Shown here: positions 2 through 62,746 of the stretch, one piece after another
How positions within the stretch are numbered: the stretch's first letter is position 1
How the letters are laid out: every line of letters starts with the position of its first letter
Virus record (IMG/VR): IMGVR_UViG_3300036944_001324
Span: 207,655-271,654 of that record
Strand: one strand, 5' to 3'
Length of the DNA: 64,000 nucleotides
Program-made: the position numbers and the translations under genes
Notes under the pieces: model-generated
What the model was told of the DNA's origin: nothing
Databases searched by the model: none
Seen by the model: the letters and a program-made list of their open reading frames with translations, nothing else

Positions 2-1561
2 ATGGAACTGTTTAAACCAAGGGATCTTGGTAACTGGTCAGCTATGCGATTCGCTCATCTTTCTTGTGGGGCTCAATTTGCTTTGGCTGAGTGGCTCTGG
101 TGTTTTTCAGTTTTAAGACACTATCGTGAAAAAAGAGTTGCAGAACTCTACGAATCTCCAACTCTACGCTATTTCTTCGAAGATGGTTTTTACAGGCCAG
201 CTGATCCCGTTAGCGTCGATATCGCTACGCCTCGTGAGTACGGATTTTCTAACAGATTTACTAGACGATCCCGAGAAATGCGCACGGAGTTTGTAGGGCA
301 ACATTTTTCCATCGTGCCGAAACTGCGAAATCCAGATTTTGATAAAGGATGGGCATCGTCTACTGAAGACGATACCGAAACCTACGCCACGTACGCATAC
401 AGAACTGAAATATTTCACAACGCCATAAAGAAAATGACAAATCAAGCACCTCAAGCGCAAAACAACAACCTGACGACCGACGAACTTTACGTTCTGGCCA
501 TCATCCGACCTAACATCATGACGTCGGAAAACTACGCTTCGACGTTCATCCGTGACAACGATGTGTTTTTCACGTATGAACACATGGACCCTTCCAAAAA
601 GGTCATGTTATCCAATGTGGACGGCTGGAAGGCTTTCTATGCCGATCGTTTCCCAGGTTGCACAGTCAGCGTAGAGAAAGGCGTTCACAAGGGCGATGAA
701 GTGCATTCACTGCGGTTTGTAGTGATGACGTCAGAACGAAAAATGGTATTGGTCTGGCTGGTGGCTGGGGATACCTATTCCCTCCACTACAAAAATCTGA
801 AAGACGTCGAGGACCTGGTTAAATACATGCAAGGTATGCATGTGCCTAAAAAGCGAACCATCGTCCGCTGCTACTCAGGTGGCGACAAACTGATCACCAG
901 CTCGGTGACTGTTGATGGTAAGTACCAAATTCATGATGAGTTCTACCCGATGGTGGAACATATCGGCGGTATGAACGCTGTTCTGGACGGGTTCAAGAAG
1001 TCTTCCAGCAACCTGATGATCTTGGCGGGTCAATGGGGTGGTGGTAAGAGCGCTTTGTTCCAAGCATTGTGCTACAGCGACGAAAACGAAGCCAACAAGT
1101 ACTACCTCATAGACGACCCCGCGGTGTATTCCGACTCTGCTTTGTTTTCTTCATTGATCGGTAAGATCGAAACTAACACCCGTGAGGGCGTTACGTCGTA
1201 TCTGTTCCTGGAGGAAGCAGACGACTACATCCGCAGCAAGAAGAACAACCCCTTCTTGTCTCGTCTGGCCGCCTTGACGGCCGGTGCGGCGCCTCTCAAG
1301 CTCAAGATCATGACCGCCACTAACGACAGCAGCGAAAGCGAGATCGACAGCGCTCTCACGCGCGGCGGGCGCCTCTACGCGATGATCAAGTTCGGTCTGT
1401 TGACGCCCGAGCAAGCCAACACTTCTCGTGCAGTTTTGGATCTGAAACCACGTGAGTTCGACAAGAACGTTACGTTGGCTGAGGCGCTGACAGAAGCTCC
1501 GATCATCACCGGCGCTGGAACCACCAAGTCCAACCGCATTGCTGTGGGTTTCACATCGTGA
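2..1561 (+). CDS. AAA+ ATPase (C-terminal AAA domain); true start may lie upstream of window
   Basis: Walker A GQWGGGKS, Walker B LFLEEAD, sensor ATND, arginine finger RGGRL. Confidence 0.85.
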   Translation: MELFKPRDLGNWSAMRFAHLSCGAQFALAEWLWCFSVLRHYREKRVAELYESPTLRYFFEDGFYRPADPVSVDIATPREYGFSNRFTRRSREMRTEFVGQHFSIVPKLRNPDFDKGWASSTEDDTETYATYAYRTEIFHNAIKKMTNQAPQAQNNNLTTDELYVLAIIRPNIMTSENYASTFIRDNDVFFTYEHMDPSKKVMLSNVDGWKAFYADRFPGCTVSVEKGVHKGDEVHSLRFVVMTSERKMVLVWLVAGDTYSLHYKNLKDVEDLVKYMQGMHVPKKRTIVRCYSGGDKLITSSVTVDGKYQIHDEFYPMVEHIGGMNAVLDGFKKSSSNLMILAGQWGGGKSALFQALCYSDENEANKYYLIDDPAVYSDSALFSSLIGKIETNTREGVTSYLFLEEADDYIRSKKNNPFLSRLAALTAGAAPLKLKIMTATNDSSESEIDSALTRGGRLYAMIKFGLLTPEQANTSRAVLDLKPREFDKNVTLAEALTEAPIITGAGTTKSNRIAVGFTS

Positions 1562-1866
1562 AAACATACCATCGAGAAAAACTGACTGGTAAAACTTCTT
1601 ACCGGGAAGGTATTTTCGGTGGTTTGGTACTGACTGTGGAAGTAAAAGAGCAGACTGCAACAGGTACGCTCTTTTACGGCCTCGTGCCAGCCCCGCCGCC
1701 GTTTCATTACACCAATGAGCAAAAAGCTCAATGGAATCGAGAACAGTACGTCAAGACAGAAGACTCCTGGACTACTGTTCGAACTTTCTATCGGGATGCC
1801 AAGAAATCCGACATGGTTTTCTTGGAGCAACTAAAGAACCAAGGGCAAGAAAATGCAGATCAATAA
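1558..1866 (+). CDS. hypothetical protein
   Basis: GTG overlaps upstream TGA (coupled). Confidence 0.65.
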   Translation: MKTYHREKLTGKTSYREGIFGGLVLTVEVKEQTATGTLFYGLVPAPPPFHYTNEQKAQWNREQYVKTEDSWTTVRTFYRDAKKSDMVFLEQLKNQGQENADQ

Positions 1867-2584
1867 AGTGGCTCAGCGCCGTAAGCGACACCTGGCAGCT
1901 CGTCAAGTATCGCTGTTCAAACATTCGTATGTTTTGTACGATAACGCTCCTGAGGTGAAGTACGACACAAAACGCGGACCCGTCATCATTGCTGGTGAAC
2001 GCCAAACAGGTAAAACAGTAGCACTGATGCAGATGGCTATCGATCTCGTGCGAAACACACCGCATCCAGTAAGGGGAAAACGAAACCTGATTGTTATCTC
2101 TGTTAGTAACGAGGTCGTTGATAGCATTTGGTGTTTGCTCTACTCGCTGATGCTCACAGGTGTTCCTGGCAAACAGATCACAGGACCACGTACTTCTGAA
2201 ATGCTGTTGAAACAATGGCTCAAGAGTTTCAAGATTGACGTTGTGATTGGGTCAGAGCGCGCACTCAACATAGAGCCAACTAATTACGAAGTCATCCACA
2301 GACTCAACGACGCGCCAGAGCAGCACGGCACGATGTGGCCCGGGATGGGGTATTTCGTTCCGGGTGTACGCTGTACGACTATAGCGAAATACAAGCGCGA
2401 ACAAGCGTTCTCTTACGAATGTTCGATGAGATTCTTGTTCGCTTCTCAAATCGTAATCGAGACTTCAATAATCGGTAACGATGAAATCGGACACATGGTC
2501 AGAGGCACGCTTGCACGCGCGCAGACTATGCCGACTGGTCATAGTTTCACCATTGGCTTCCTTCCCAAGAAGACCAATGGCTGA
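1853..2584 (+). CDS. P-loop-containing protein (possibly degenerate NTPase)
   Basis: Walker A IIAGERQTGKT; no clear Walker B. Confidence 0.6.
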   Translation: MQINKVAQRRKRHLAARQVSLFKHSYVLYDNAPEVKYDTKRGPVIIAGERQTGKTVALMQMAIDLVRNTPHPVRGKRNLIVISVSNEVVDSIWCLLYSLMLTGVPGKQITGPRTSEMLLKQWLKSFKIDVVIGSERALNIEPTNYEVIHRLNDAPEQHGTMWPGMGYFVPGVRCTTIAKYKREQAFSYECSMRFLFASQIVIETSIIGNDEIGHMVRGTLARAQTMPTGHSFTIGFLPKKTNG

Positions 2585-2658
2585 TCCCTCCACATGGGTA
2601 TACAGACCCCGTTACGGCGGGCTCTTAGATGACATCACACATCAACTCAAGCAAAGGA

Positions 2659-4762: not shown

Positions 4763-4773
4763 TTACACTAGCA

Positions 4774-4812
4774 GCATAAAACGAGGTGGGGAAACCCACC
4801 TCGTATGCCGTC
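4774..4812 (+). terminator. hairpin terminator, CATA...TATG class
   Basis: GCATAAA ACGAGGTGGG GAAA CCCACCTCGT ATGCC. Confidence 0.8.
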
Positions 4813-8479: not shown

Positions 8480-8550
8480 GGGTCAGCTTTGACGCCATAC
8501 AGGAGGACCTTTCGGGGTCCTCCTTTTATGTCGATTCTATTTTTTCTTGG
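8480..8550 (+). repeat. 71-bp direct repeat copy 1 (terminator + T-tract, just upstream of putative early promoter)
   Basis: 67/71 identical to 10019..10089. Confidence 0.9.
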
Positions 8551-10018: not shown

Positions 10019-10089
10019 GGGTCAGCTTTGACATCATATAGGAGGACCCTTCGGGGTCCTCCTTTTATGTCGATTCTATTTTTTCTTGG
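10019..10089 (+). repeat. 71-bp direct repeat copy 2
   Basis: see 8480..8550. Confidence 0.9.
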
Positions 10090-11827: not shown

Positions 11828-11840
11828 TAAAAGAATATCA

Positions 11841-11874
11841 CCAAGAGGGTAGCACCTCTTGGTTTTATGCCGTC
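11841..11874 (+). terminator. hairpin terminator
   Basis: CCAAGAGG gtagca CCTCTTGG TTTTATGCCG. Confidence 0.75.
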
Positions 11875-13255: not shown

Positions 13256-13265
13256 ACTTTAACCG

Positions 13266-13297
13266 GCATAAGAGCCTTGCACGACGCAAGGCTCTGT
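13266..13297 (+). terminator. hairpin terminator
   Basis: GCATA AGAGCCTTGC acgac GCAAGGCTCT. Confidence 0.75.
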
Positions 13298-17027: not shown

Positions 17028-17116
17028 GATTGGTGATTTAAAGAAAGCCTGGCGACATATCATCGTTTGGAGGAACAGCACATCCTCCAAACATCCTCAA
17101 CTTCCAACTTCCTCAG

Positions 17117-18854: not shown

Positions 18855-18890
18855 AGGAGAGGCTATCTGCGGCCTCTCCTTTTATGCCGA
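18855..18890 (+). terminator. hairpin terminator
   Basis: AGGAGAGGC...GCCTCTCCT TTATGCCG. Confidence 0.75.
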
Positions 18891-22676: not shown

Positions 22677-22680
22677 ACGT

Positions 22681-22718
22681 CATATCGCCAGCAGCTTATC
22701 GGGCTGCTGGCTTTTTCT
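22681..22718 (+). terminator. hairpin terminator
   Basis: CATAT GCCAGCAGC...GCTGCTGGC TTTTT. Confidence 0.75.
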
Positions 22719-24500: not shown

Positions 24501-24625
24501 TGTTATTTGAGTAGTCATGCACGGCGAAACAGGAAGAATCCTTTGACTCTTTCATACCCAACTACTTGCTCCTTCAATGGGGTGAGTAGTTGGGTTATTC
24601 CCTGTTTCTTTTTTGGTCCTCAATA

Positions 24626-25828
24626 ATGCCTTATCCAACCCCCAACTATAGCTTGGCCGTTATGGCTAAGACGGCGATTCAGTTCTTTGAACAGAATACC
24701 GTACTGGCCGATTTGCAAATTGGTCAAGAGACTGACACCAAACGTTTCAAAATTGGTGATGGTGTCACTGCGTGGAATACGCTCCCCTACGCTGTACAGG
24801 GCAACGAGAACAGCATCTGGGTAGGGTTGTCTCCTGATGTAGGCAACCTGCTGGAGCTCACGCTCGCTCGCAATGGCTTCTACCTGAACCCAGTTACGTT
24901 CGACGGCACGACGGTGCTCAACCAATCCATCGATGGAACGCTGACAGACATCACGCCGTACTTGACGGCTAACCAACAGCTGGCTGGCTTCGTAGCGGCT
25001 GGTTTGATGATTCGCAAAGTCGTCCTGGCTCTGGGTGCTGACTGGAATCTGAATACCACTGACCCCATTCCCGCAACAACCGTCACGCAAGCCATTGACT
25101 CCGTCTCTGATGCTTTGACTTCGCTTGCGGGAACTGTTAGTGGTTTGATCAACGACTCTGCTGTTAGCGCTTCGACCACCTACTCTTCGACCAAGATCGG
25201 TACGCTGGTAAATGATGCCATCGCTGCGATCATTGGTGCCGCACCTGAAGCTCTGAACACAGTCTACGAACTAGCTGCCGCTCTCGGTAACAATCCCGAT
25301 CTGGTGACGAACATCGTTACTGAGTTGGGACAGACTGTGAAGATCACAGCGCAAACCCTGACGGCCCCGCAACAAGCCCAGGCTCGAACCAATATCGGCG
25401 CAGCTTCTGCAGCTGATCTGGGTAGCCCGGATGAGAACACTTTGACTCTGGAAGCAAAGTACCTGTACGAAAAGTCAATCGCTACAGGCGGTATCGAGAT
25501 CACAATCGAACCCAATCCATTGGTCATTGTGAAGACCGCTCCATTTGTGGCTAAAGTCATCTCTGATGGAAGTGTTCATCGAGAAGGTATTTACGCACTG
25601 GATACTTCTGGCGGGTCCTTCATCACACAAATGCCTGCAAACCCACTGCCGGGTGATGAGGTGGAATACCTCGACTACAACGGGACTTTCGATACGGGAC
25701 CTGCTGAGCTCTCTCCTAACGGGAAGAAGTTCATGGGACTTAACGAGAGTTACATTCTCAATCAAAAGAACCGAGGCCGCCGCTTCAAGTTCGTTGATGA
25801 GGACAAAGGTTGGATGCCAATGGCCTAA
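24626..25828 (+). CDS. tail fibre / virion structural protein
   Basis: Mtd_N/hyaluronidase-N-like QETDTKRFKIGDGVTAWNTLPY; fibre motifs TTYSSTKI, APEALNTVYELAAALGNNP, QQAQARTNIG. Confidence 0.8.
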   Translation: MPYPTPNYSLAVMAKTAIQFFEQNTVLADLQIGQETDTKRFKIGDGVTAWNTLPYAVQGNENSIWVGLSPDVGNLLELTLARNGFYLNPVTFDGTTVLNQSIDGTLTDITPYLTANQQLAGFVAAGLMIRKVVLALGADWNLNTTDPIPATTVTQAIDSVSDALTSLAGTVSGLINDSAVSASTTYSSTKIGTLVNDAIAAIIGAAPEALNTVYELAAALGNNPDLVTNIVTELGQTVKITAQTLTAPQQAQARTNIGAASAADLGSPDENTLTLEAKYLYEKSIATGGIEITIEPNPLVIVKTAPFVAKVISDGSVHREGIYALDTSGGSFITQMPANPLPGDEVEYLDYNGTFDTGPAELSPNGKKFMGLNESYILNQKNRGRRFKFVDEDKGWMPMA

Positions 25829-25829
25829 C

Positions 25830-25867
25830 GACATAAAGAGCCTCCCTTTTGGGAGGCTCTTATGCTG
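25830..25867. terminator. bidirectional terminator between convergent fibre genes
   Basis: GACATA AAGAGCCTCCC TTTT GGGAGGCTCTT ATGC. Confidence 0.85.
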
Positions 25868-25868
25868 C

Positions 25869-32026: not shown

Positions 32027-32057
32027 TTTTCAGCAATACATTATCTATAGGACGAAA

Positions 32058-32099
32058 GCATAAGAAGCCCAGGCTTTGCGGCCTGGGCTCTATGCCGTC
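32058..32099 (+). terminator. hairpin terminator, CATA...TATG class
   Basis: GCATAAGA AGCCCAGGC...GCCTGGGCT CTATGCCG. Confidence 0.8.
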
Positions 32100-34329: not shown

Positions 34330-34340
34330 CATTCATTCAT

Positions 34341-34378
34341 CATAAAAGGCAAGGGTTCATTCCCTTGCCTTATGTCGT
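34341..34378 (+). terminator. hairpin terminator, CATA...TATG class
   Basis: CATAAA AGGCAAGGG...CCCTTGCCT TATGTCG. Confidence 0.8.
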
Positions 34379-36192: not shown

Positions 36193-36846
36193 ATGGCACA
36201 AATTCGCATGTCTCCTGAAAATGTTAAACGTGTTCTAGCTACGGCCAAACTCGCCACGCATTGCCGATTGAGTAATGACCCGATGTGGTACAAAATCGTT
36301 TCTGTGGATGACAAAGTTCACGGTGACATCCATCTGGCTCATCCTCTTGATCCCTCCAACCAAGCCACAAACATAATTTACGTGAAGATGAACACAGACC
36401 CGTCTCAGATCCTCTTTTGCAACATTGCAGAAGTTCCTCTGGTTGGTCCAGCACTTACACCAGCGCAAGAGCTTTTCCAAAAGCTCTTCGATCTCAAACA
36501 AGAGATGTTGGGAATTACCAAAAGCATTTCATCCATTAAACACCTCGACAAAGAGTCTTACAAAGAGTGCCTTTTTGGGATGTACCAGGCGTTGGCTGTG
36601 CCAACTAAGCGGATTGGTGTTACCGATAACAAGGCAGCCTACGACTGGTTTGTTTCTCAGGGTTGTTCTCTAACCACCACCGCTGTGGCCATTGCTTTGT
36701 GTGATGAAATCTATTCACACTGGCGAGCCATGGTTACAAAGACAATGCTATTCCAAGTAAAACAATCTGGTTACGACGATTGGGAACGTCGATTCAAGCT
36801 GATAGACCTCATTATGGAAGATCTGAATAAGCCTCACACAGCATAA
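36193..36846 (+). CDS. hypothetical protein, tandem paralog A
   Basis: VKRVLATAKLATHC...FKLIDLIMEDL. Confidence 0.75.
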   Translation: MAQIRMSPENVKRVLATAKLATHCRLSNDPMWYKIVSVDDKVHGDIHLAHPLDPSNQATNIIYVKMNTDPSQILFCNIAEVPLVGPALTPAQELFQKLFDLKQEMLGITKSISSIKHLDKESYKECLFGMYQALAVPTKRIGVTDNKAAYDWFVSQGCSLTTTAVAIALCDEIYSHWRAMVTKTMLFQVKQSGYDDWERRFKLIDLIMEDLNKPHTA

Positions 36847-36875
36847 GAGCAGAGGGCGCAACGCCCTCTGCTTTA
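36841..36875 (+). terminator. hairpin terminator
   Basis: GCATAAG AGCAGAGGGC gcaac GCCCTCTGCT TT. Confidence 0.75.
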
Positions 36876-36900: not shown

Positions 36901-37554
36901 ATGAATCAAACTGCCATCTCCCCCAAAGACGTAAAGCGTGTGCTGGCTACTGCTAAAGTAGCGACCCATTGCAAACCGGCCAACACTACTGTCTGGAACA
37001 AGATCGTTAGTGTTGATGAAGAGGACTACTTCATCTACCTTGCTGACCCACTCGATCGGTCGAATCAAATCACTTCGTCTATTGAAGTGCGTTTGTTGTA
37101 TGGTCCAGACCAGTTGGTGTTTGCAAACATTCAAGAAGTTGAATTAGTGACCCCGGACACCAAGCCCGGCGAAGTGTTGCTTTTTCAATTGCATGAAATC
37201 AAACGTGATATGAGCGCCATCATTACCAACGTGACTCGTTTCGATAAAGTGAAGCGCAAAGATTACCACGAATGTATTGATCGCTTGTACTACGCGTTGA
37301 TGTCGACGGTAAAGGTCGGTGTTTTTGAGAAAGAGACTTACAGCTGGTTTCGAAGTCAGCGTTGCTCTTTCACGACTGCAAGTCTGGCTGTCTTGCTTTA
37401 TAAAGAGACGAACACTCACCGAAATACGCTCTATAACAAGAACGTGAGCAATTACTCACTGCAGGAAGGGTTCAGCAACTGGGGCCGCTGGTTCAAGTTG
37501 ATCGACCTAATCATGGAAGACTTGAAAAAGGCTTTCCCACTCACACAACTGTAA
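36901..37554 (+). CDS. hypothetical protein, tandem paralog B
   Basis: VKRVLATAKVATHC...FKLIDLIMEDL. Confidence 0.75.
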   Translation: MNQTAISPKDVKRVLATAKVATHCKPANTTVWNKIVSVDEEDYFIYLADPLDRSNQITSSIEVRLLYGPDQLVFANIQEVELVTPDTKPGEVLLFQLHEIKRDMSAIITNVTRFDKVKRKDYHECIDRLYYALMSTVKVGVFEKETYSWFRSQRCSFTTASLAVLLYKETNTHRNTLYNKNVSNYSLQEGFSNWGRWFKLIDLIMEDLKKAFPLTQL

Positions 37555-37592
37555 GCATAAAAGCAAGGGGCGTAAAGCTCCTTGCTATGCCG
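37555..37592 (+). terminator. hairpin terminator, CATA...TATG class
   Basis: GCATAAA AGCAAGGGGC...GCTCCTTGCT ATGCCG. Confidence 0.75.
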
Positions 37593-37615
37593 TTAATCCA
37601 TCGAAAGACTGTCAA

Positions 37616-38920: not shown

Positions 38921-39674
38921 CGCTTCGCTAGTAACTGTCGCTTTTACGTTACCACGTAAAAGCTCTTTCAATCTCTTAGATTTCTAATTGAGTTATGAAC
39001 GTTAGTTCATGATTCTCTTAGGAACTTTGAGGTATCTACTCAGGGGTTCCTATACCCCTGAGAGTTCGTATAAGGCCTTATAAAGCCGACATAAAAGCAG
39101 GAGGGTACACTGACCCTCCTGCTGTAGGTAATAACGCCTTATACGAGCTTTACAGTAGAGACTCGTAGACGAAGTCTACAGTCTCATATCCAGCATGGAC
39201 AAAAATGTCCATGCTCTCTTTATATCTTATGCGCAAGTCGTCGAGCTTTTTCGGCGACTGAGAGAGTACACGGAACATGGACAGCCCGCAGGGATGGACA
39301 GTGGAGAGTACGAACGAAGGAGCATACCAGGGAGAGAGCGTAAGCGATCACACTGAGATACTTCGCCGGGTAGCTACGTATCTCAGATAAGGGGCGTTAG
39401 CCCCTTTTTTATTCTTATTCTTATTCTCCATATGATTGTTTACTTAGTAAACCTAATTAGACATTCGGTGGAGAATAATATCTATCCAGCGTTGGAGAGC
39501 TTATAAACGCTGTTACAATGACCCTTGTTTACAAGAGAATGACTATTGGATCGACATTAAGTCGACAGATCGAGCAGGTGTGCTACGTTACACCTGCGCT
39601 GTAACCCTAGCCTAAGAGCTTGGAGAGCAGTAGATCAAAAAAGTTCTTATGTTCAACAAACGAGAGAGTCAAAC
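38921..39674. other. ORF-free multi-hairpin region (candidate replication origin / packaging or ncRNA locus)
   Basis: at least 10 inverted repeats in 750 bp; no ORF of 60 aa or more inside. Confidence 0.6.
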
Positions 39675-40355: not shown

Positions 40356-40395
40356 AGCCCTAGGGAGTTGGCGCTCCCTAGGGCTTTTATGCCGT
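40356..40395 (+). terminator. hairpin terminator
   Basis: AGCCCTAGGGAG...CTCCCTAGGGCT TTTATGCCG. Confidence 0.8.
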
Positions 40396-42747: not shown

Positions 42748-42758
42748 ATCAACAAGAC

Positions 42759-42799
42759 GGCATAACGGAGAGGGGTTGCACCCTCTCCGTTTCTATGCA
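42759..42799 (+). terminator. hairpin terminator, CATA...TATG class
   Basis: GGCATA ACGGAGAGGG...CCCTCTCCGT TTCTATGC. Confidence 0.8.
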
Positions 42800-42810
42800 T
42801 GATTTATTTT

Positions 42811-47081: not shown

Positions 47082-47435
47082 ATGCGCAAAATTACTCCGA
47101 CACGCAAGAACATCAAACGCATGACGCGTCGTCTGGCTGGTCGAGCACACATCCAAATCAGTGCAGCCCGGCAAGTCTTTCGTTCTAAAGCAACCCTTCT
47201 GCGCAATTTGGAGCTCGTTCGTGACGCTTGGAAGATCTGTCCAGAAGACGGCACCAACAAGGACCAACCCCACGAACGACTGTCGGTTGGGAACGACGTG
47301 TATGTCGTCTACCGCTACGGTGAACCTGTCTTCACTTGGACGGAAGCCCACTCTATCGGTCGCTTTGGCGACATTAAACAATGGGCTGGCGCGCTGCTGG
47401 AAACCCAAATTGACCCAACTCACCGACTCAACTGA
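47082..47435 (+). CDS. basic hypothetical protein
   Basis: ATG immediately after upstream stop. Confidence 0.65.
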   Translation: MRKITPTRKNIKRMTRRLAGRAHIQISAARQVFRSKATLLRNLELVRDAWKICPEDGTNKDQPHERLSVGNDVYVVYRYGEPVFTWTEAHSIGRFGDIKQWAGALLETQIDPTHRLN

Positions 47436-47445
47436 AAAGAAAATC

Positions 47446-48525
47446 ATGACCACCAAACGCCTCGCTATCCCCAATACCGCCATCCTCACGAACATCGACG
47501 AAAACGATGGAATCGACGTGATGCGTCTCTGCTTTGAAGATCCAGAGAAGGACATGAAGGTCATCTACCACAAAGACTGCTTGGACGGCACGGTTGCCTC
47601 TCTTGTAGCTTGGCTGATGAGCGAAAGCAAATGCGATGTGTTACCTATGTCGTACCAAGACACAGTTCACGATGATCTCCTGAGCGCCGAAAAACTCTAC
47701 GTGATTGTCATGGTGGATTTCTGTCTTCCACCAGACGTTCTCAAAGCGCTGGCCGCTCACGGCCATGACGTGATTGTTATCGATCACCATGGCTCAGCCA
47801 TCGACAAGATCATGGCTATCCCGAAGGAAGAGACCAATTTCTGGTACTTCCTGGCTTCCGATAACTTGGCGATGACGAACGAGCAAAAGCAGTCTGGCGG
47901 CAGTCTCGCTTTAAAGTTCTTCCAATACATCAATGTCTACAACAGTGCGATGTGTAAAGACGGTGGGTTGGAGCGGCTCGTATCACTGGCGCGTGAGCAC
48001 GATCTGTGGCTGCATGGCGGCGATCCTTCTACCGACGCCATGGCGCTGGCTTACTGGCATAAGAACAAGTGCTTCGAAGACTTGCAACAGATCTGGCACG
48101 ATACCAACCTCACGGTAGAAGCCGTCGACGAACTGGTGGCCGAAGGTCGTGTGCATTTGGACAAAGCGGTCTCTGAAATCAACGAAGTGATCAAATGTGG
48201 TTGCTTGGTTGAAATCAACGGTAACCGGGCATGGTTGTTCTACTGCGAACGTGCTTACACCTCGCTGGCCGGCTCGATTGTCAATCGAATTTACGATATC
48301 GCTATCTCCTTCTACAAGGAAGGCGACAAGTTCAAGATGAGCATCCGCACCGCCGACGGTTCTTTTGCGGACGCGAGTAAGCTCGCCGCCGTCTACGGTG
48401 GAGGCGGGCATAAGCACGCTGCGGGTTTCTACACGGATGTCTATCCCGCTGTGCTCCTCAAGCGTTCACCACCCCCACCTGTTGCTTTGGCACCTAATGT
48501 GGTAATCAACCCCAACCAAGCCTAA
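47446..48525 (+). CDS. DHH/DHHA1 phosphoesterase
   Basis: YHKDCLDG, VMVDF, VIDHHGS, REHDLW, GGGHKHAAGF. Confidence 0.9.
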   Translation: MTTKRLAIPNTAILTNIDENDGIDVMRLCFEDPEKDMKVIYHKDCLDGTVASLVAWLMSESKCDVLPMSYQDTVHDDLLSAEKLYVIVMVDFCLPPDVLKALAAHGHDVIVIDHHGSAIDKIMAIPKEETNFWYFLASDNLAMTNEQKQSGGSLALKFFQYINVYNSAMCKDGGLERLVSLAREHDLWLHGGDPSTDAMALAYWHKNKCFEDLQQIWHDTNLTVEAVDELVAEGRVHLDKAVSEINEVIKCGCLVEINGNRAWLFYCERAYTSLAGSIVNRIYDIAISFYKEGDKFKMSIRTADGSFADASKLAAVYGGGGHKHAAGFYTDVYPAVLLKRSPPPPVALAPNVVINPNQA

Positions 48526-48527
48526 AC

Positions 48528-48565
48528 GGCATAAACGAGGGGCAGTGAAGTCCCTCGTATTTTTA
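48528..48565 (+). terminator. hairpin terminator
   Basis: GGCATAA ACGAGGG...CCCTCGT ATTTTT. Confidence 0.7.
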
Positions 48566-53885: not shown

Positions 53886-53896
53886 ACTCCCAAACA

Positions 53897-53947
53897 GCAT
53901 AAAGCCCACCAGAGCCTCTTTTGAGGTTTCTGGTGGGTAGCTATGCC
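53897..53947 (+). terminator. long hairpin terminator, CATA...TATG class
   Basis: GCATAAAG CCCACCAGA.CCTC TTTT GAGG.TTCTGGTGGG TAGCTATGCC. Confidence 0.75.
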
Positions 53948-54162
53948 TTTTGTTTTTTCGTTCCTTGTAACGCTATTTAGGGGCTTTACAGAAGGTCTTT
54001 ATTTCACGGTTCTATTGGAGCATTGACTCAAAATAACGTAACCCAGGTCAGATAGGAAGACAAGAGAACATGATATGCATTTTTGAACACCTTCGATAAA
54101 TAAGCGTGTCAAAGATCCTCAGAATTTCCTCCTTTCATCTTCTTCTCTTTAGAGCACCACCC

Positions 54163-55459: not shown

Positions 55460-55461
55460 GG

Positions 55462-55501
55462 CGACATAAGCAGGGAGCTTTCGGGCTCCCTGCTTATGTC
55501 G
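55462..55501. terminator. bidirectional terminator
   Basis: GACATAAGCAGGGAGC TTTCGG GCTCCCTGCTTATGTC, fully palindromic arms. Confidence 0.85.
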
Positions 55502-55506
55502 CTTAC

Positions 55507-55718: not shown

Positions 55719-56984
55719 TTACTTCGTGTTCTTCAAACTCCACATGTAATAACTCATCAGTGCGTCAGCTGCTTTGAAATTGTGACGATAAACCCGCTGC
55801 GCGGCGTTGACCAGTTTGAACAACAAAATCGCGTACCTGATACGATAGCGGATAAACTTGATAGGTGACGTATAAATATGCAGGGTATTGAACCAAGATG
55901 AAACCACTGGGATTAGAAAGTTTCGACGCAACTCCCAAACAAAAGGTTTCACCTGGGTGTTGAAGTAGATGAACTGTTTGTTAATGTCTTCACCGATGTT
56001 GATCAGTGTGTCAATTTCTTTTTGAATAGAAACAGACGACTTTACTTTCAACTGTAGTGACTGAGGCAAATCACTTATTTCCCAAACACTGTTGTGATGA
56101 ATTGCAGCGCGTGCGAGCGTCTTCATCATGTCCGGAAGGTTATCCGTTTGACCTTGCACAGGGTCCATTACGGTTTCTTCACCGAAAATAGCGTCAGGAC
56201 CTGTCAAAGACAGCGTACCTGGAAAGAAATGGCTTTTCTCAAACGAGGCAGTAACTCGGTCGAAGTCAACGCTACCCTTTGTTTGATTCAAGAAAGAAGA
56301 AAACGTAGAACTTACTCCGGAAAGCATCATCACCATTCCGTCCACTGGGTCTTTCATTCGGTTGACGATATCTTGCAGCTCGCCAGCTGACTTCAAAGGC
56401 GTTTTGTCGCCTTTAGTCATATGAGCGATTGTTACGCGGTTTGTAAATAGTGCGTCAGTGGGCTCCCCAGAAACAGCACCTGCTGCGTTGCGAAGTTTGA
56501 TCGCCTGATTACGCCAGGATTGTTTGGTGCGGGTGATATAGTCGATTTCTGACGTCATCCGTTTAATCAGTGTGTCCAAATCGTTACCGTATTTCTTACC
56601 CACTTCATCAGCGGCTTCCGTAGCGTAGGCTATGACTTCTTTTGCAGTCATGCGTTTACCTTCAAAACGTTCGCTTGAAATGGAACGGGTCTTCACATCG
56701 TGACGTGAAAAGATAGCGTTCAGTGTTTCTTGAGCAAGGCTGAGTGAGGCTTCACTCAGCTCTCCGTCTGGATGTTTTTCAAGAACATCAGTAATTTCGA
56801 CCACGGTATCGATGTCGTTAAGCACGCGTTCGACAACGTTTGGCGCGTGATGGCCTTCGGCATCCACCTCACCGAAGAGTTCTTGCACATCGATACCAGC
56901 AACTTCGCTGATTTCGTCGCTGGAGCCTGTGGTCAACTCCACGCTGCTCTCCAAACCGAGAGAGCGACGCATAATAGCTTTCAT
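55719..56984 (-). CDS. phiKZ-like internal head (ejection) protein, paralog 1
   Basis: acidic propeptide with S/A/G-x-E sites (GLES, AQET, ATEA), aromatic helical C-terminus; AAGGA RBS. Confidence 0.65.
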   Translation of the reverse strand: MKAIMRRSLGLESSVELTTGSSDEISEVAGIDVQELFGEVDAEGHHAPNVVERVLNDIDTVVEITDVLEKHPDGELSEASLSLAQETLNAIFSRHDVKTRSISSERFEGKRMTAKEVIAYATEAADEVGKKYGNDLDTLIKRMTSEIDYITRTKQSWRNQAIKLRNAAGAVSGEPTDALFTNRVTIAHMTKGDKTPLKSAGELQDIVNRMKDPVDGMVMMLSGVSSTFSSFLNQTKGSVDFDRVTASFEKSHFFPGTLSLTGPDAIFGEETVMDPVQGQTDNLPDMMKTLARAAIHHNSVWEISDLPQSLQLKVKSSVSIQKEIDTLINIGEDINKQFIYFNTQVKPFVWELRRNFLIPVVSSWFNTLHIYTSPIKFIRYRIRYAILLFKLVNAAQRVYRHNFKAADALMSYYMWSLKNTK

Positions 56985-57143: not shown

Positions 57144-57146
57144 GGC

Positions 57147-57188
57147 GGCATATAAAGCAGGGAGCCCGAAAGCTCCCTGCTTATGTCG
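57147..57188. terminator. bidirectional terminator, copy of 55462 with inverted loop
   Basis: GCAGGGAGC CCGAAA GCTCCCTGC TTATGTC. Confidence 0.85.
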
Positions 57189-57193
57189 CTTAC

Positions 57194-57401: not shown

Positions 57402-58670
57402 TTACTCGTTGTTTTCCAGGCTCCACTCGTAGTATCCGAGCATGCAGGTAGCTGCCTTGAAGTTCAGATCGAACATGTTTTCGACAGCGTCGATAACTTG
57501 ACCGAGCAGACGGGTGTAAAGTTGTTGAAAACGAATGAAACGAATAGGTGACGTCAGCATGTCCAGTTGGTTGTTGCCTTCGATCTGATTGTAATACTCA
57601 TTCAAGTATTTTGTGAATTCGCGATCCCGACGGTTGTAAAGATCAATAATCTCGTCACCGACCTTCACAAATGCACCGATGGAGCTTTTCATCTCGTTGA
57701 TCGTCAAAGGTGGGAGTGGCTTGATGTCCAGATCTTTGACCTTCCAAACATGAGTATGTTGGATCGTAATGGTCTTCATGATGGCCATCATTTCTTCAGC
57801 AGTGTTGGAAACACCACCGAAGTCAGAGATCACAGTCTCTTCACCGAAGAGTGCCTGAGGGCCAGTCACCGACAACATGCCGCGGTTGAACTTGCTTGGC
57901 GGGAAAGCTTTCGCAATGTCGTCGAAGTTGACTTTACCCTTTTCGCTGTTGAACCAGCTAAAGAGCGAGTAGAGACCCTCGAGGAACTCGCCACAACCCG
58001 TCAGGCTTTCCTGCGTCTGCAGGATATTCTTGTGCATTGCGTTGCCGTCGTGCAGTACGGTCTGGTCGCCCAGCGTCATGTACGCAATACGAATGTTGTT
58101 CGTGTACTGGGCGCCCGCTTTTGGAGCACCACGCGTGGAACCCAGTTGTTTCTGCAGACGCATTGCTTCTTTGCGCCACGTAGTGCGGCGGCGGAAGGCG
58201 TGCTGGGTGTTGACCTTCATGCGTTCCAAGAGATTTTTGGCGCCCTGAACAACACCTTCGCGAGCCATGGTGACCATGCTTTCTTGGGCGTAAGCAATGG
58301 CTTCCTTGGTCACGGCGCCTTGTCCCTTGGAGACAGCCTCCTTGGCGAAGTTCACGCCCGGCTTGATACCGTGGCGAGCGAAGATCGCTTGCAAGTTTTC
58401 CTGGGCAACTGCCAAAGCCACGGGAGTTGCGCCTTCGTCGCCGGTCTTCTTCAGAACGTCAACGATTTTCTGCACAGTCACCATGTCGGCTTCGATGATG
58501 TCGATCTTTTGCTTCGAGTTGTCAACGTTCGGAGCGTGGTGACCTTCCTTGTCCACTTCGCCGAACAGTTCAGCAACATCGACGCCAATGACGTCGGATT
58601 CTGGGCTTTCTGCAGAGGAGATGGTTACAGCGGTTTCCAGACCGAGAGCCCGGCGTGTGAATACTTTCAT
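57402..58670 (-). CDS. phiKZ-like internal head (ejection) protein, paralog 2
   Basis: shares ELFGEVD.EGHHAPNV, AQE.L.AIF, GP.A.FGEETV, TSPI.FIR with paralog 1. Confidence 0.65.
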   Translation of the reverse strand: MKVFTRRALGLETAVTISSAESPESDVIGVDVAELFGEVDKEGHHAPNVDNSKQKIDIIEADMVTVQKIVDVLKKTGDEGATPVALAVAQENLQAIFARHGIKPGVNFAKEAVSKGQGAVTKEAIAYAQESMVTMAREGVVQGAKNLLERMKVNTQHAFRRRTTWRKEAMRLQKQLGSTRGAPKAGAQYTNNIRIAYMTLGDQTVLHDGNAMHKNILQTQESLTGCGEFLEGLYSLFSWFNSEKGKVNFDDIAKAFPPSKFNRGMLSVTGPQALFGEETVISDFGGVSNTAEEMMAIMKTITIQHTHVWKVKDLDIKPLPPLTINEMKSSIGAFVKVGDEIIDLYNRRDREFTKYLNEYYNQIEGNNQLDMLTSPIRFIRFQQLYTRLLGQVIDAVENMFDLNFKAATCMLGYYEWSLENNE

Positions 58671-59634: not shown

Positions 59635-59636
59635 TC

Positions 59637-60083: not shown

Positions 60084-60127
60084 AAACACACAAACCATCA
60101 ACCATTTGATAAACATGAAAGCAAACC

Positions 60128-60550
60128 ATGAACCCATCCCCCTATTTCAAGGAAATCACCGACGCTGATTTCGTCCAAGAAGTCCAAAACGCTGAAGGCA
60201 TTGTGGTGCTGGTCTTCTACCGCGACAACTGCGGTTCTTGCAAGACCTTCCAACCTGTCTTGGAAGAGTTTGCGTCACAGTACCGCGGCCAAGTCAAGTT
60301 CGTTCGTCTGAACACCAACACCGGTGGTACCTACCACTCGCGCCGCCTGGCTGCCGCCGGCGAGCCAGCTACCTTTGTGATGTACAAAGGTAACCAAGAA
60401 GGCTCTTTTGTGGGTGCTGCATTGCCGAAGTACTTCCACCCCATCATGGCCGACATCTTCACGTCTTTGGCAAATCGCTTGGGTATTCCAGCTCCTATGG
60501 CGATCACCGAGCTGTCTACCGCAAATGCAGCAACCGTAACCAGTTCATAA
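60128..60550 (+). CDS. thioredoxin
   Basis: VLVFYRDNCGSCK, VKFVRLN, cis-Pro EPATF. Confidence 0.85.
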   Translation: MNPSPYFKEITDADFVQEVQNAEGIVVLVFYRDNCGSCKTFQPVLEEFASQYRGQVKFVRLNTNTGGTYHSRRLAAAGEPATFVMYKGNQEGSFVGAALPKYFHPIMADIFTSLANRLGIPAPMAITELSTANAATVTSS

Positions 60551-60564
60551 GAACGGTGCGAACG

Positions 60565-60606
60565 ACATAAGAAGCCTGGCCGTAAAGGCCAGGCTTCTAT
60601 GCTGTC
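60565..60606 (+). terminator. hairpin terminator, CATA...TATG class
   Basis: GACATA AGAAGCCTGGCC gtaaa GGCCAGGCTTCT ATGC. Confidence 0.8.
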
Positions 60607-60654
60607 TATCTTTCTTTTTCAATTCTATGTATCATCTTTTTCATAGAAAACAAA

Positions 60655-62700
60655 ATGTTCATCATTGACACCATCAAACGCGCAGTCGGTTACGTTGAAG
60701 TCGAGCAGATCGATCGCCCTGGTAACTATCCGATCATTCGAGTTGTCGGCATCCGTGGCGACTTTCTTGCCAAGGATATTGGTCGCTACTACAGGACCTC
60801 CAAAGTAGCCACAGCTGTATTCGACAAAATAACAAAGAACTCTGTCACGCTCCCGGCATTCTTTGCCTTGGAGTTTGCCAAGTATTTGGAAGACGTGATT
60901 TCGGAACGTAACCACACTTACGTTCCCCGTCGCTCAGCCAAGGCAATACTTGATGGCCTCAAGACAGCCACCTGGCTCAAGAAGACTACAGAAGAAGTTC
61001 CAAGTCGCTTGGACTATTCCAAACTCTCCAATTTTTACTACGAACCAAAACCCTACCAACGTACATGGCTTGAGAAGTTCGAGAAAGTTGGTTACCAGTT
61101 CACGCTCAACGGCTCCATCCTTGATGCTGCCCCCGGCTCTGGTAAAACACTCTCCTCTCTTTTCTTGGTGGAGTGCTCTGATGCTGACGTGGTGATTATC
61201 ATCTCTCCTCAAAATGCTCTTCGACGAGTCTGGGTAAACACCCTTGAGACCGGGATGAAGAAAGCCCCAACTTGGTGGTGTAGCGATAAAGGTGGGGTAC
61301 CAGGTAATGAGAAATACCTGATCTTTCACTATGAAAAGCTGGCTGAGGCAGTTGCCCACCTGACCAAACTCAAAGGCAAGAAGATCGCCATCATTGTTGA
61401 TGAAAGCCATCACTTCAACAACGAGAAGTCTGGACGCACTCAGCTGTTGATCGAGCTGTGTAATAAGTCCGAAAGCAACACGATTGTCCTGCAGTCGGGA
61501 ACTCCTTTCAAAGCAGTCGGTGCCGAGATTGTTCCTGCCTTGTTCTGTATCGACCCCACGTTCAATGACGAATTGGCCGGCCGTTTCCGAAAGATCTACG
61601 CTGCCTCGGCCGACAAAGCTCTTGAGCTACTGATGCATCGGCTTGGGATGATTAGTCACAAGGTGACCAAAGCTGAACTGGGATTACAATCCCCAGTCAT
61701 CACCAACATTGGTGTTACTTTTGATGGTGCTGAAAAGTACACGCTGACGGAAGTAGCTAAAGAGATGAAGAAGTTCATTGAAGAACGCACCTCTTACTAC
61801 AAAGCTCGTCAGAAAGACGACGAGAGCTATTACTTGTCGGTATTGGAGAAACACGAGAAGACACTGCGTGGTCCTCAGATGACCGACTATAAACAGTATT
61901 TGCAGGATGTGAAGATCATTCGTAAGTCTGACCTGCGCAGTATTGGTGAGATCATCCAGCGTGCAAACAGCTACGAAAACCGCGTGATCATCCCTGGCTT
62001 GCAGCAAGGTGAGGTCGCACGCTTCAAGGAAGCCAAGACCATCTACAAATACGTAGTTCTCAAAATCCAAGGTGAATGCCTTGGTCAAGTACTTGGTCGC
62101 AAACGGATGGAGTGCTCCGTAGCTATCTCCAAGAACTTCGATTACGAAAAGTACATCGAATCCACCACCAAGAAAACGTTGATCTACACGATCTACGTAC
62201 AGGCTCTGGAATCAGCAGTGCAGCGCCTGAAGGACATCGAGTACCAGCCTTTGGCGGTCTACGGTGAAACCAACAAGAACTTAGCAAGTATTGTGGAGAT
62301 GTTCGAGAAGAAAGCCGAACTCAATCCATTGGTTGCAACATTCCACTCGTTGTCAACAGCCGTTCCACTCACAATGGCAGATGTAATGGTGATGCTGGAC
62401 GTTCCTTGGCGCGATTACATTTTGCAGCAGACCATCTCTCGTGTATCACGTCTGGGTGCAGATACGCAACCACGTATCTTCATTTGTAACTTGGTCACCG
62501 GAGAAGAACCTAACCTTTCCACAAGGACGGTTGATATTCTTCGCTGGTCACAGCAACAACTGGTTAAGATCACAGGACATGAGTCTCCGTATGCTCTGGA
62601 CGATAAAGCCATCACGGTTGAAGCTTACTCGATGCTCAACAAACCTCTTGATCTCATGACTGATGATCTGGAGTCCCGTTTCTTGGCGCGACTGGCGTAA
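60655..62700 (+). CDS. SF2 (SNF2/DEAD-like) helicase, phiKZ-like
   Basis: Walker A APGSGKT, motif II IVDESH, motif III SGTP, motif VI QTISRVSRLG. Confidence 0.85.
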   Translation: MFIIDTIKRAVGYVEVEQIDRPGNYPIIRVVGIRGDFLAKDIGRYYRTSKVATAVFDKITKNSVTLPAFFALEFAKYLEDVISERNHTYVPRRSAKAILDGLKTATWLKKTTEEVPSRLDYSKLSNFYYEPKPYQRTWLEKFEKVGYQFTLNGSILDAAPGSGKTLSSLFLVECSDADVVIIISPQNALRRVWVNTLETGMKKAPTWWCSDKGGVPGNEKYLIFHYEKLAEAVAHLTKLKGKKIAIIVDESHHFNNEKSGRTQLLIELCNKSESNTIVLQSGTPFKAVGAEIVPALFCIDPTFNDELAGRFRKIYAASADKALELLMHRLGMISHKVTKAELGLQSPVITNIGVTFDGAEKYTLTEVAKEMKKFIEERTSYYKARQKDDESYYLSVLEKHEKTLRGPQMTDYKQYLQDVKIIRKSDLRSIGEIIQRANSYENRVIIPGLQQGEVARFKEAKTIYKYVVLKIQGECLGQVLGRKRMECSVAISKNFDYEKYIESTTKKTLIYTIYVQALESAVQRLKDIEYQPLAVYGETNKNLASIVEMFEKKAELNPLVATFHSLSTAVPLTMADVMVMLDVPWRDYILQQTISRVSRLGADTQPRIFICNLVTGEEPNLSTRTVDILRWSQQQLVKITGHESPYALDDKAITVEAYSMLNKPLDLMTDDLESRFLARLA

Positions 62701-62702
62701 CA

Positions 62703-62746
62703 GCATAGAGACCTACCCGTAACTGGGTAGGTCTCTTATGCCGTCT
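62703..62746 (+). terminator. hairpin terminator, CATA...TATG class
   Basis: GCATA GAGACCTACCC...GGGTAGGTCTC TTATGCCG. Confidence 0.8.

What the first reader, a model, noticed from the sequence alone, without database searches (positions are those of the whole stretch)
2..62746. Genome-wide hairpin class bracketed by CATA...TATG, not canonical U-tract terminators
Seen: 13 intergenic hairpins carry both a 5' (G/GA)CATA and a 3' TATG(C/T) flank (4774, 8496, 10035, 25830, 32058, 34341, 37555, 42759, 53897, 55462, 57147, 60565, 62703); 9 more carry one flank. Inner stems differ completely but the flanks are conserved, can pair into an outer stem, and many hairpins lack a long U-tract. Inference: a sequence-specific signal for a phage multisubunit RNAP or termination factor, or a 3'-end RNA tag for processing, stability or export from a phage nucleus. 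The palindromic flanks would make it work on both strands.
Basis: partly seen in the sequence, partly recalled or inferred. Interest (0 to 1): 0.6.

Follow-up and report, generated by a model that had tools for sequence, protein, structure and literature searches.

The report
Jumbo-phage terminators with TATG flank
These hairpins are real: they are the sequence-tagged transcription stop signals already described for phiKZ-type "nucleus-forming" giant phages, found here in an uncultured relative, often in a mirrored form that serves both DNA strands.

Summary
All 13 sites are strong hairpins bracketed by CATA and TATG, far above chance (23 pattern hits against 1.7 in shuffles). Nine more carry one flank.

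The window is the last 64 kb of a 271.6-kb uncultured chimallivirus, a phiKZ-like phage with a nuclear-shell protein and split multisubunit RNA polymerases. Genome-wide, TATG is the tetramer most enriched next to hairpin 3' ends (34-fold). The conserved flank is longer than reported, T-rich then TATGYYGTYT.

This matches the terminator motif mapped by long-read RNA sequencing in phiKZ (hairpin + TTATKYYGT, 61 terminators) and seen again in 201phi2-1.

- **Position:** elements start a median of 17 nt after stop codons, carry both arms at convergent gene pairs, and are almost absent between divergent genes.
- **Conservation:** at the site after the capsid gene, the flank is invariant in six relatives while the inner stem changes by compensatory substitutions.
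- **Arms:** they do not covary to pair, and Watson-Crick pairing is depleted at one position. They are best read as mirrored copies of a one-way signal, not a selected outer stem.

Best reading: a lineage-specific, hairpin-dependent terminator for the phage polymerases. This is a new member of a known kind. How the flank works is still untested. Its core equals the phiKZ late-promoter core TATG.

The parts
4771..4811 (.). Two-armed terminator element (CATA-hairpin-TATGCCGTCT), co-directional junction
   Evidence: (-25.9 kcal/mol, z -5.4)
8492..8534 (.). Two-armed element (right arm TATGTCGATT), then a T-run and an ATATAT-type promoter-like motif; near-duplicate of the 10035 element
10031..10073 (.). 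Two-armed element, near-duplicate of 8496
   Evidence: (z -6.2)
11840..11873 (+). One-armed element: hairpin + TATGCCGTCT, no left CATA
13263..13295 (-). One-armed element: only the arm read on the minus strand (TATGCCGG); the plus-strand 3' side is T-rich
17052..17093 (-). One-armed element, minus-strand arm TATGTCGCC
18855..18890 (+). One-armed element: hairpin + TTTATGCCGA
22677..22711 (-). One-armed element after the NAD-dependent ligase gene: minus-strand arm only; the plus-strand 3' side is TTTTTCTATC
25828..25868 (.). Two-armed, bidirectional element between convergent genes (24590-25828 plus, 25869-27215 minus)
32055..32098 (.). Two-armed element, right arm TATGCCGTCT
   Evidence: (z -6.4)
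34337..34378 (.). Two-armed element, right arm TATGTCGTTT
36838..36872 (-). One-armed element, minus-strand arm TATGCTGT only
37552..37593 (.). Two-armed element, right arm TATGCCGTTA
39086..39123 (-). One-armed element, minus-strand arm TATGTCGG only
40356..40395 (+). One-armed element: 12-bp hairpin + TTTATGCCGTCT
42757..42801 (.). Two-armed element; the minus-strand arm (TATGCCGTCT) is the better-conserved one
48526..48558 (-). One-armed element, minus-strand arm TATGCCGTTT; the plus-strand 3' side is ATTTTTAG
53894..53949 (.). Two-armed element with a long (about 15 bp) inner stem, at a convergent junction by my crude gene calls
   Evidence: (z -7.0)
55461..55502 (.). Two-armed, nearly perfect 18-bp palindrome beside the 421-aa minus-strand paralog
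   Evidence: (-40.7 kcal/mol, z -9.5)
57145..57189 (.). Two-armed element, inverted near-copy of 55461, beside the 422-aa minus-strand paralog
60562..60605 (.). Two-armed element upstream of the helicase gene
62700..62744 (.). Two-armed element just after the helicase gene stop (60655-62700)
   Evidence: (z -6.7)

Best explanation
The hairpins are the transcription terminators of a phiKZ-like (Chimalliviridae) jumbo phage. They belong to the sequence class already mapped in phiKZ and 201phi2-1.

The working unit is directional. It consists of a GC-rich stem-loop of about 10-13 bp, a short T-rich stretch, and then the conserved word TATG-Y-Y-G-T-(Y-T) on the non-template strand.

The phage's own multisubunit RNA polymerases (virion and non-virion enzymes) transcribe through the hairpin. 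Instead of a long U-tract, they rely on this conserved word as the pause-and-release part of the signal (inference).

The 5' CATA arm is the same word on the other strand. Where genes converge, both arms are kept and the element stops transcription from both sides. At co-directional junctions the antisense arm is optional and less conserved.

Shown here: sequence class, position, orientation bias, and conservation with compensatory stem changes. Taken from the literature: RNA 3' ends map at this motif in phiKZ. Inferred: how the flank acts, whether as a sequence-specific pause or release read by the polymerase in the DNA, in the hybrid or in the RNA.
For: Genome identity:
- Nuclear-shell protein family, four RNAP beta/beta' fragment families, and phiKZ-type capsid and sheath proteins.
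- A gp123 homolog lies in synteny after the capsid gene.

Motif identity:
- The published phiKZ terminator consensus ends in TTATKYYGT (PMC10914365). Of 79 sense-oriented arms here, 64 are TATGYYG and 51 are TATGYYGT.
- My own look at phiKZ 100-150 kb shows the same elements, including the left arm.

Position:
- Hairpins start a median of 17 nt after the stop codon, and TATG starts -2 to +3 nt from the stem end.
- Hairpin-linked TATG arms by context: 51 sense and 44 antisense at co-directional junctions, 28 convergent, only 2 divergent.

Directionality: sense arms keep TATGYYG in 64 of 79 cases, antisense arms in 23 of 44 (p = 0.0017).

Conservation:
- After the capsid gene, TTTTATGCCG is identical in six genomes whose capsid proteins are 51-81% identical. 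Six of 16 stem pairs show compensatory double changes.
- The same flank follows the capsid gene in phiKZ, FLC9, RSL2 and pEa_SNUABM_37.
- TATG is the top tetramer after hairpins in G000, G005, G007, FLC9 and phiKZ.
- TTATGCCGT is enriched in all 8 chimallin-positive IMG/VR jumbo contigs tested. It is not enriched in the complete contig that lacks chimallin.
Against: - No RNA 3'-end data exist for this phage. The only RNA libraries holding it are low-depth assembled contigs. Three of them run straight across the capsid-gene terminator, which means either read-through or DNA carry-over.
- ONT 3' ends in phiKZ cannot separate true termination from processing, and I found no in vitro termination assay with the phage polymerases.
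- About half of co-directional junction hairpins also carry the antisense arm. Some carry only that arm, which a purely sense-directed terminator model does not require.
- My gene calls are crude and ORF-based, so some context labels may be wrong.
Confidence: 0.8

Rival explanations
1. Terminator-promoter cassette. The hairpin stops the upstream transcript, and the adjacent TATG is a start site for the non-virion RNA polymerase (as in phiKZ late promoters, where the G of TATG is +1). Each gene would then be re-initiated right after the previous terminator.
For: - TATG with G = +1 is the necessary core of phiKZ late promoters. It is bound in the non-template strand by a pocket of gp123 (PMC4666361, PMC12809450).
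- G000 has a gp123 homolog with 10 of 14 pocket residues identical, against 28% identity overall.
- At co-directional junctions the next start codon lies about 30-150 nt downstream.
- TATG/CATA is the second most depleted tetramer in the genome (obs/exp 0.70), as expected for a word that acts as a signal.
Against: - The flank is most complete at convergent junctions (25 of 28 arms there have the mirrored arm, C at -3 in 100%). A start site there would fire antisense into a gene's 3' end.
- Hairpin-linked TATG is almost absent from divergent spacers, where promoters are needed (2 of 125).
- TATG is no more frequent at co-directional than at convergent hairpins.
Confidence: 0.15
2. An RNA-level 3'-end tag. 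The hairpin plus UAUGYYGU is recognised in the transcript by a protein, either an endoribonuclease that makes the 3' end or a stability or export factor of the phage nucleus. The polymerase itself would not read it.
For: - The word is conserved whether it is paired (two-armed) or unpaired (one-armed). This suggests it is read as sequence.
- ONT 3' ends cannot tell termination from cleavage.
- Phage mRNAs must leave the nucleus-like shell (PMC12908238).
Against: - No factor with such specificity is known. ChmC eCLIP found no motif, and its binding peaks lie near start codons.
- The T-rich stretch plus hairpin is the ordinary architecture of intrinsic terminators, and ARNold classed the phiKZ sites as intrinsic.
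- Nothing here tests this reading directly.
Confidence: 0.1
3. The two flanks are selected to pair. This would extend the stem to about 20 bp, giving a long double-stranded RNA that acts as an RNase III-type processing site or an extra-stable, anti-termination-resistant terminator, as suggested for 201phi2-1 motifs A and B.
For: - CAUA and UAUG pair in the minimum-energy fold of 12 of the 13 sites.
- The -1/+4, -3/+6 and -4/+7 mirror positions are mostly complementary.
- The 201phi2-1 authors note that motif B elongates the hairpin.
Against: - At the variable mirror pair (-2/+5) Watson-Crick combinations are depleted: GC 8, AU 2 against AC 19, GU 11 (p = 0.002). This is repeated in an independent genome (p = 0.026), with pooled p = 3.5e-5.
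- There is no positive covariation at -5/+8.
- Many functional-looking elements have only one arm.
- The left arm is lost in relative L202 while the right arm stays invariant.
Confidence: 0.05
4. A DNA-level palindromic repeat family (REP/MITE-like, or cruciform sites for replication, recombination or packaging) that only happens to sit between genes.
For: - Near-palindromic DNA occurs in dozens of copies.
- A few near-identical copies exist (8496/10035 and 55462/57147).
- The phage encodes an SbcC-like protein.
Against: - Inner stems are unrelated in sequence, so the copies are not spread by transposition.
- Placement is tied to stop codons and gene orientation.
- Orthologous sites keep the flank while the stem is replaced by compensatory change.
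- The near-identical copies accompany duplicated genes.
Confidence: 0.03

Closest known systems
phiKZ conserved intrinsic terminator motif (Putzeys et al. 2024, Microlife, PMC10914365): 5'-BCCYCCCCHWWDGGGRRGGBYTTATKYYGT-3', 61 terminators mapped by ONT-cappable-seq
   Same: - A GC-rich stem-loop followed directly by TTAT-G-Y-Y-G-T.
- Placed after genes, and bidirectional at convergent pairs.
- The phage transcribes with its own split multisubunit RNAPs.
- I saw the same elements, including the CATA arm, in phiKZ 100-150 kb.
   Different: - The phiKZ stem consensus (CCYCCCC...GGGRRGG) is not kept here. The best matches to the full 30-nt consensus need 4 or more mismatches.
- G000 favours C at the Y positions (TATGCCGT), in line with 51% against 37% GC.
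- G000 has about 80 strong hairpins, more than the relatives examined.
- No RNA ends are mapped for G000.
201phi2-1 terminator motifs A and B (PMC11512511)
   Same: Motif A (n = 59) is said to resemble the phiKZ motif strongly. Motif B co-occurs with it in 21 terminators and lengthens the hairpin, which fits the 5' mirrored arm seen here. Fifteen terminators there are bidirectional.
   Different: - I could not see the logos or tables, because no supplements are held. That motif B equals the left arm is my inference.
- The authors read the longer stem as resistance to anti-termination. My covariation counts argue that the arms are not selected to pair.
phiKZ late promoter core TATG (Yakunina 2015, PMC4666361; gp123 pocket structure, PMC12809450)
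   Same: The same four bases on the non-template strand. The G000 gp123 homolog keeps most pocket residues.
   Different: - Late promoters have no upstream hairpin and no conserved YYGT.
- The element here sits at gene 3' ends, including convergent junctions.
Canonical bacterial intrinsic (Rho-independent) terminators, including bidirectional ones with an A-tract and a U-tract
   Same: A GC-rich hairpin just after the stop codon, a T-rich proximal 3' segment, and mirrored flanks that let one hairpin serve both strands.
   Different: Only 20% have at least 5 T in 8 nt. A specific non-U word (GYYGU) is conserved where ordinary terminators have only U-richness.
Neisseria DNA uptake sequence (ATGCCGTCTGAA), often found as inverted pairs in terminators
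   Same: A chance resemblance of the word ATGCCGTCT, and its occurrence as inverted repeats.
   Different: The full 10- or 12-mer is absent from the genome (0 hits). Here the word flanks a unique stem rather than forming the stem. Rejected.

Membership tests
Chimalliviridae (phiKZ-type) conserved terminator motif | GC-rich stem-loop immediately followed by TTATKYYGT | tested here: met
   - 33 of 79 sense arms match TTATKYYGT exactly, 51 match TATGYYGT and 64 match TATGYYG.
- TATG starts -2 to +3 nt from the stem end.
- 47 of the 62 genomic TTATKYYGT sites are hairpin-linked.
Chimalliviridae (phiKZ-type) conserved terminator motif | Located downstream of genes, and bidirectional between convergent genes | tested here: met
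   - Median of 17 nt from stop codon to hairpin.
- 25 of 28 arms at convergent junctions have the mirrored arm, and only 2 of 125 arms lie in divergent spacers.
- Gene calls are my own crude ORF calls.
Chimalliviridae (phiKZ-type) conserved terminator motif | The host genome is a chimallivirus with its own multisubunit RNAPs | tested here: met
   Nuclear-shell protein phrog_4795; RNAP beta/beta' pieces phrog_3295, 3015, 2987 and 2986; PF00562 hit; gp123 homolog at E = 5e-63.
Chimalliviridae (phiKZ-type) conserved terminator motif | RNA 3' ends accumulate at the motif | not testable with these tools
   Only assembled, low-depth metatranscriptome contigs hold this phage, and contigs cannot show RNA ends.
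Chimalliviridae (phiKZ-type) conserved terminator motif | phiKZ-specific stem consensus CCYCCCC-loop-GGGRRGG | tested here: not met
   No site matches the full 30-nt consensus with fewer than 4 mismatches. Stems are unique to each site. I treat the stem consensus as a phiKZ-specific detail rather than as defining, because FLC9, RSL2 and pEa_SNUABM_37 also have other stems with the same flank.
Canonical intrinsic terminator | U-tract: at least 5 U within 8 nt starting 0-2 nt after the stem | tested here: not met
   16 of 79 (20%) pass. The consensus scan misses the five two-armed sites in 44-64 kb.
phiKZ-type late promoter | TATG at the start site upstream of a gene, without need of a hairpin | tested here: inconclusive
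   - The TATG word is present, but its context (gene 3' ends, convergent junctions, YYGT extension) argues against a promoter role.
- No 5'-end data are available.
- Free TATG upstream of genes is not enriched: 90 sense against 67 antisense in 26 kb.
Structured RNA with a selected outer helix (flank-flank pairing) | Covariation that maintains pairing between the 5' and 3' flanks | tested here: not met
   Watson-Crick pairs are depleted at -2/+5 (p = 0.002; replicate p = 0.026; pooled p = 3.5e-5), and there is none at -5/+8.

The most novel reading that the evidence does not exclude
[quoted passage not shown] One four-base word would then mark both starts (alone) and stops (after a hairpin, with the YYGT extension). 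This would resemble sigma-dependent pausing at -10-like words. In that case the flank is a protein-read pause or release element that replaces the U-tract. The systematic one-position mismatch between mirrored arms would keep the word accessible.
Probability: 0.2. Interest if true: 0.7.

Novelty: new member of a known kind. Interest (0 to 1): 0.3.

Why it matters
For annotation, the word hairpin + TATGYYGT is a reliable marker of transcription-unit ends in uncultured nucleus-forming jumbo phages. It is also a cheap sequence flag for that family in metagenomes. It was enriched in all 8 chimallin-positive contigs tested and not in the complete chimallin-negative one.

For mechanism, the termination signal of these sigma-less, split multisubunit polymerases has not been dissected. 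Three facts make a concrete, testable question:
- its conserved core equals the late-promoter core;
- it stays invariant while stems turn over across relatives with 51-81% capsid identity;
- mirrored arms avoid perfect pairing.

None of this changes the basic picture already published for phiKZ.

Tried and rejected
- **Nearest relatives:** a megablast of 20 kb against cultured phages found no match. A capsid-protein scan of IMG/VR found nothing usable.
- **Motif scan of IMG/VR:** a 16-base scan gave 119 or more loci. By my rough estimate most single hits are what chance would give in a collection of that size, so I used only the jumbo contigs, each with its own control.
- **Neisseria DUS idea:** rejected, because the full DUS is absent.
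- **RNA evidence:** four metatranscriptome runs hold 9-15% of the words of the capsid region. Only short assembled contigs could be laid. Three cross the terminator, and nothing can be said about RNA ends.
- **Supplementary tables:** the tables of the two ONT-cappable-seq papers (TTS and TSS coordinates) are not held. I could not measure where phiKZ 3' ends fall relative to TATG, or whether late start sites coincide with terminators.
- **Free TATG as promoter:** no clear enrichment upstream of genes.
- **Sense versus antisense arm preference** as the cause of the anti-covariation: rejected, because C/T use at position 5 is similar in both and the effect holds within convergent elements.
- **Pocket residues versus flank use across phages:** suggestive only. 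Vibrio phage pVa-21 has the most diverged pocket and the weakest TATG enrichment (5.9-fold), but it still has some, and n = 7.
- **ChmC as reader of a 3' tag:** no support in its eCLIP paper.
Full report
**1. What the window is.**
The window is the last 64 kb (207,655-271,654) of a single 271,654-bp IMG/VR virus record rated 99% complete, with 51% GC. It has no near match among cultured phages. The best cultured capsid match is Burkholderia phage FLC9 at 41% identity.

The genome encodes:
- a nuclear-shell (chimallin) family protein;
- four families of split RNAP beta/beta' fragments;
- a phiKZ-type major head protein and tail sheath;
- a homolog of phiKZ gp123, lying after the capsid gene as in phiKZ (27% identity, E = 5e-63).

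The same phage, or close strains, occurs in shale-gas (probable source), wastewater, aquifer, biofilm and soil metagenomes. Relatives with 51-81% capsid identity exist as contigs of up to 258 kb.

**2.
- All 13 sites carry CATA, a hairpin and TATG. As RNA they fold at -18 to -41 kcal/mol, z = -3.8 to -9.5.
- I also find nine one-armed elements in the window.
- CATA-N12-42-TATGYYG occurs 23 times against 1.68 +/- 1.42 in shuffles. TATGYYGT occurs 22 times against 6.1.
- In an unbiased test, I took every perfect stem of at least 9 bp in the genome and looked at its flanks. TATG is the most enriched tetramer, present in 92 of 162 flanks where 2.7 are expected.
- Conversely, 96 of the 101 intergenic TATGYYGY sites have a strongly folding sequence directly upstream.

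**3. Anatomy.**
- Anchored on TATG, the sense flank reads T (about 65% at each of -3 to -1), TATG, C/T, C/T, G (82-92%), T (70-82%), C/T, T. The left arm is its mirror.
- Stems are mostly 10-13 bp, and TATG begins -2 to +3 nt from the stem end.
- Only 20% of elements have at least 5 T in 8 nt. The simple hairpin-plus-T-run scan does not pick up the five two-armed sites in 44-64 kb.

**4. Context shows a terminator, not a promoter.**
- Hairpins begin a median of 17 nt after the stop codon.
- Oriented arms fall as follows: 51 sense and 44 antisense at co-directional junctions, 28 at convergent junctions, and only 2 in divergent spacers.
- The mirrored arm is present in 25 of 28 convergent cases but 29 of 51 co-directional ones. 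It is also better conserved at convergent junctions (C at -3: 100% against 72%).
- Sense arms keep TATGYYG in 64 of 79 cases, antisense arms in 23 of 44 (p = 0.0017).
- A start signal would not be most complete exactly where it would fire antisense into a converging gene, nor be missing from divergent spacers.

**5. It is a known class.**
- ONT-cappable-seq of phiKZ found 133 termination sites. Sixty-one predicted intrinsic terminators share the motif 5'-BCCYCCCCHWWDGGGRRGGBYTTATKYYGT-3' (PMC10914365).
- In 201phi2-1, motif A (n = 59) 'strongly resembles' it. A second motif, B, co-occurs with it and lengthens the hairpin (PMC11512511).
- The 3' part is the flank seen here.
- In phiKZ 100-150 kb I see the same elements, some with the CATA arm, including the one after the capsid gene gp120.

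**6. Comparative evidence gathered here.**
- *Orthologous site after the capsid gene.* Six genomes (G000 and five relatives at 51-81% capsid identity) have TTTTATGCCG identical in every one. The inner stems differ, and 6 of 16 pairs show double compensatory changes. One relative lacks the left CATA.
- *Other junctions.* Two further orthologous junctions behave the same way. They include an A:T to G:C swap between two close relatives.
- *Cultured phages.* Further out, the flank follows the capsid gene in phiKZ, FLC9, RSL2 and pEa_SNUABM_37. It does not in Vibrio phage pVa-21 (plain T-run) or Bacillus phage AgentSmith.
- *Tetramer test.* TATG tops the tetramer list after hairpins in G005, G007, FLC9 and phiKZ, and is weak in pVa-21.
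- *IMG/VR jumbo contigs.* Of ten contigs picked up by a pattern scan, TTATGCCGT was 5- to 20-fold above its reversed control in all eight with a chimallin homolog. It was also enriched in a 65%-complete contig in which I found no chimallin. It was at control level in the complete contig without chimallin.

**7. The arms are mirrored copies, not a selected helix.**
- At the variable mirror pair (2 nt outside CATA against position 5 after TATG), Watson-Crick combinations are depleted. The counts are GC 8, AU 2, AC 19 and GU 11 (p = 0.0019).
- This holds within convergent elements (p = 0.021). It recurs in an independent chimallivirus contig (p = 0.026), and the pooled value is p = 3.5e-5.
- It is not explained by different preferences of sense and antisense arms.
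- One arm tends to be TATGCCGT and the other TATGCTGT.
- I have no tested explanation. Avoidance of long perfect palindromes or of long perfect double-stranded RNA is possible.
- The word is conserved whether paired (two-armed) or unpaired (one-armed). This suggests it is read as sequence.

**8. Mechanism.**
*Established elsewhere.* In phiKZ, TATG with G as +1 is necessary for non-virion RNAP initiation. It is held, as non-template single strand, in a pocket of gp123 (PMC4666361, PMC12809450).

*Found here.* The G000 homolog keeps 10 of the 14 listed pocket residues at 28% overall identity. TATG/CATA is the second most depleted tetramer in the genome (0.70). The polymerase of this phage therefore probably reads TATG too.

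*My best account (inference).*
- The hairpin provides the destabilising force.
- The short U-rich stretch plus the conserved word sets the pause or release point.
- The Y-G steps (TAT|G and YY|G) lie 2-8 nt past the stem. From my own knowledge of the pyrimidine(-1)/G(+1) pause consensus of multisubunit RNAPs, this is where a pause would help termination.

*Open questions.* Whether the gp123 pocket takes part is open. I put it at about 0.2. I found no paper on termination by these enzymes. Processing or a 3' tag cannot be excluded, since ONT ends do not separate termination from cleavage. The known export-linked protein ChmC shows no such motif.

**9. Limits.**
- Gene calls are my own ORF-based approximation.
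- No RNA-end data could be obtained for this phage.
- The TTS and TSS tables of the key papers are not held.
- Comparisons across cultured phages are few.

**10. Verdict.**
It is not a selected outer stem, and the export-tag idea is untested. The class is already published for phiKZ and 201phi2-1, so this is a new member in an uncultured lineage.

Three small additions come out of this work:
- the flank stays invariant while stems turn over;
- its core equals the late-promoter core;
- the mirrored arms avoid pairing at one position.

Noticed in passing
window about 8550, 10091, 11934, 42819; also G000 49894, 53232, 57160, 129038: A recurrent promoter-like motif: an A/T-run followed by GGCGATATAT(G/A)C, with a variant CACATATCATC. 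It often sits directly after a terminator element. It may be an early or middle promoter of the phage polymerases.
   Followed up: partly
G000 66225-66290 (L004 6225-6290) and the same spacer in L200-L204: In the spacer between the capsid gene and the next gene there is a conserved CACATATCATC motif. About 25 nt later comes a small hairpin plus TTTATGCC(C/G)TCT. It is conserved in 5 of 6 relatives and looks like a promoter-proximal terminator or attenuator, or a roughly 50-nt RNA.
   Followed up: partly
window 13263, 17052, 22677, 36838, 39086, 48526: Six one-armed elements at co-directional junctions carry only the arm that reads TATG on the antisense strand. Their sense 3' side is T-rich instead. 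Why antisense-only signals are kept there is unexplained.
   Followed up: partly
two-armed elements genome-wide; also contigs G005 and G007: The mirrored arms avoid Watson-Crick pairing at one position (TATGC[C/T]GT against its mirror), pooled p = 3.5e-5. The cause is unknown.
   Followed up: yes
whole genome G000: TATG/CATA is the second most under-represented tetranucleotide (obs/exp 0.70 under a second-order model), after CTAG (0.46).
   Followed up: partly
G000 61356-61400 and orthologous sites in L200, L201, L203: A second terminator type without TATG: a hairpin followed by GTGCTTGTC... and a run of about 9 T. It is conserved across relatives after the roughly 175-aa gene that converges on the DnaB-like gene.
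   Followed up: no
window 9012 and 10156; seven more sites elsewhere in G000: About nine genes share an almost identical translation-start region, TTTAAGGAGTATCCTCATG. This suggests a gene family or a shared leader.
   Followed up: no
window 55719-56984 (-) and 57402-58670 (-): Tandem paralogs of 421 and 422 aa with no PHROG match. Each is flanked by a near-identical terminator element.
   Followed up: no
L200 1-2953, L201 634-2936, L204 351-2639 (relatives, not the window): In the relatives the thymidylate synthase gene is interrupted, by a NUMOD3/I-TevI-like homing endonuclease gene in L200 and L201 and by an intein with a LAGLIDADG domain in L204.
   Followed up: no
G000 63143-63161 (outside the window): Free TATG words lie 59-74 nt upstream of the gp119-like gene, in the divergent spacer that is syntenic with phiKZ promoter P119L. 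They are candidates for the orthologous late promoter.
   Followed up: no
window 20604-22676, 47161-48525, 60655-62700: Annotatable genes in the window: an NAD-dependent DNA ligase, a DHH phosphoesterase and a large helicase. Window 24590-25828 and 25869-27215 look like tail-fibre or virion proteins.
   Followed up: partly
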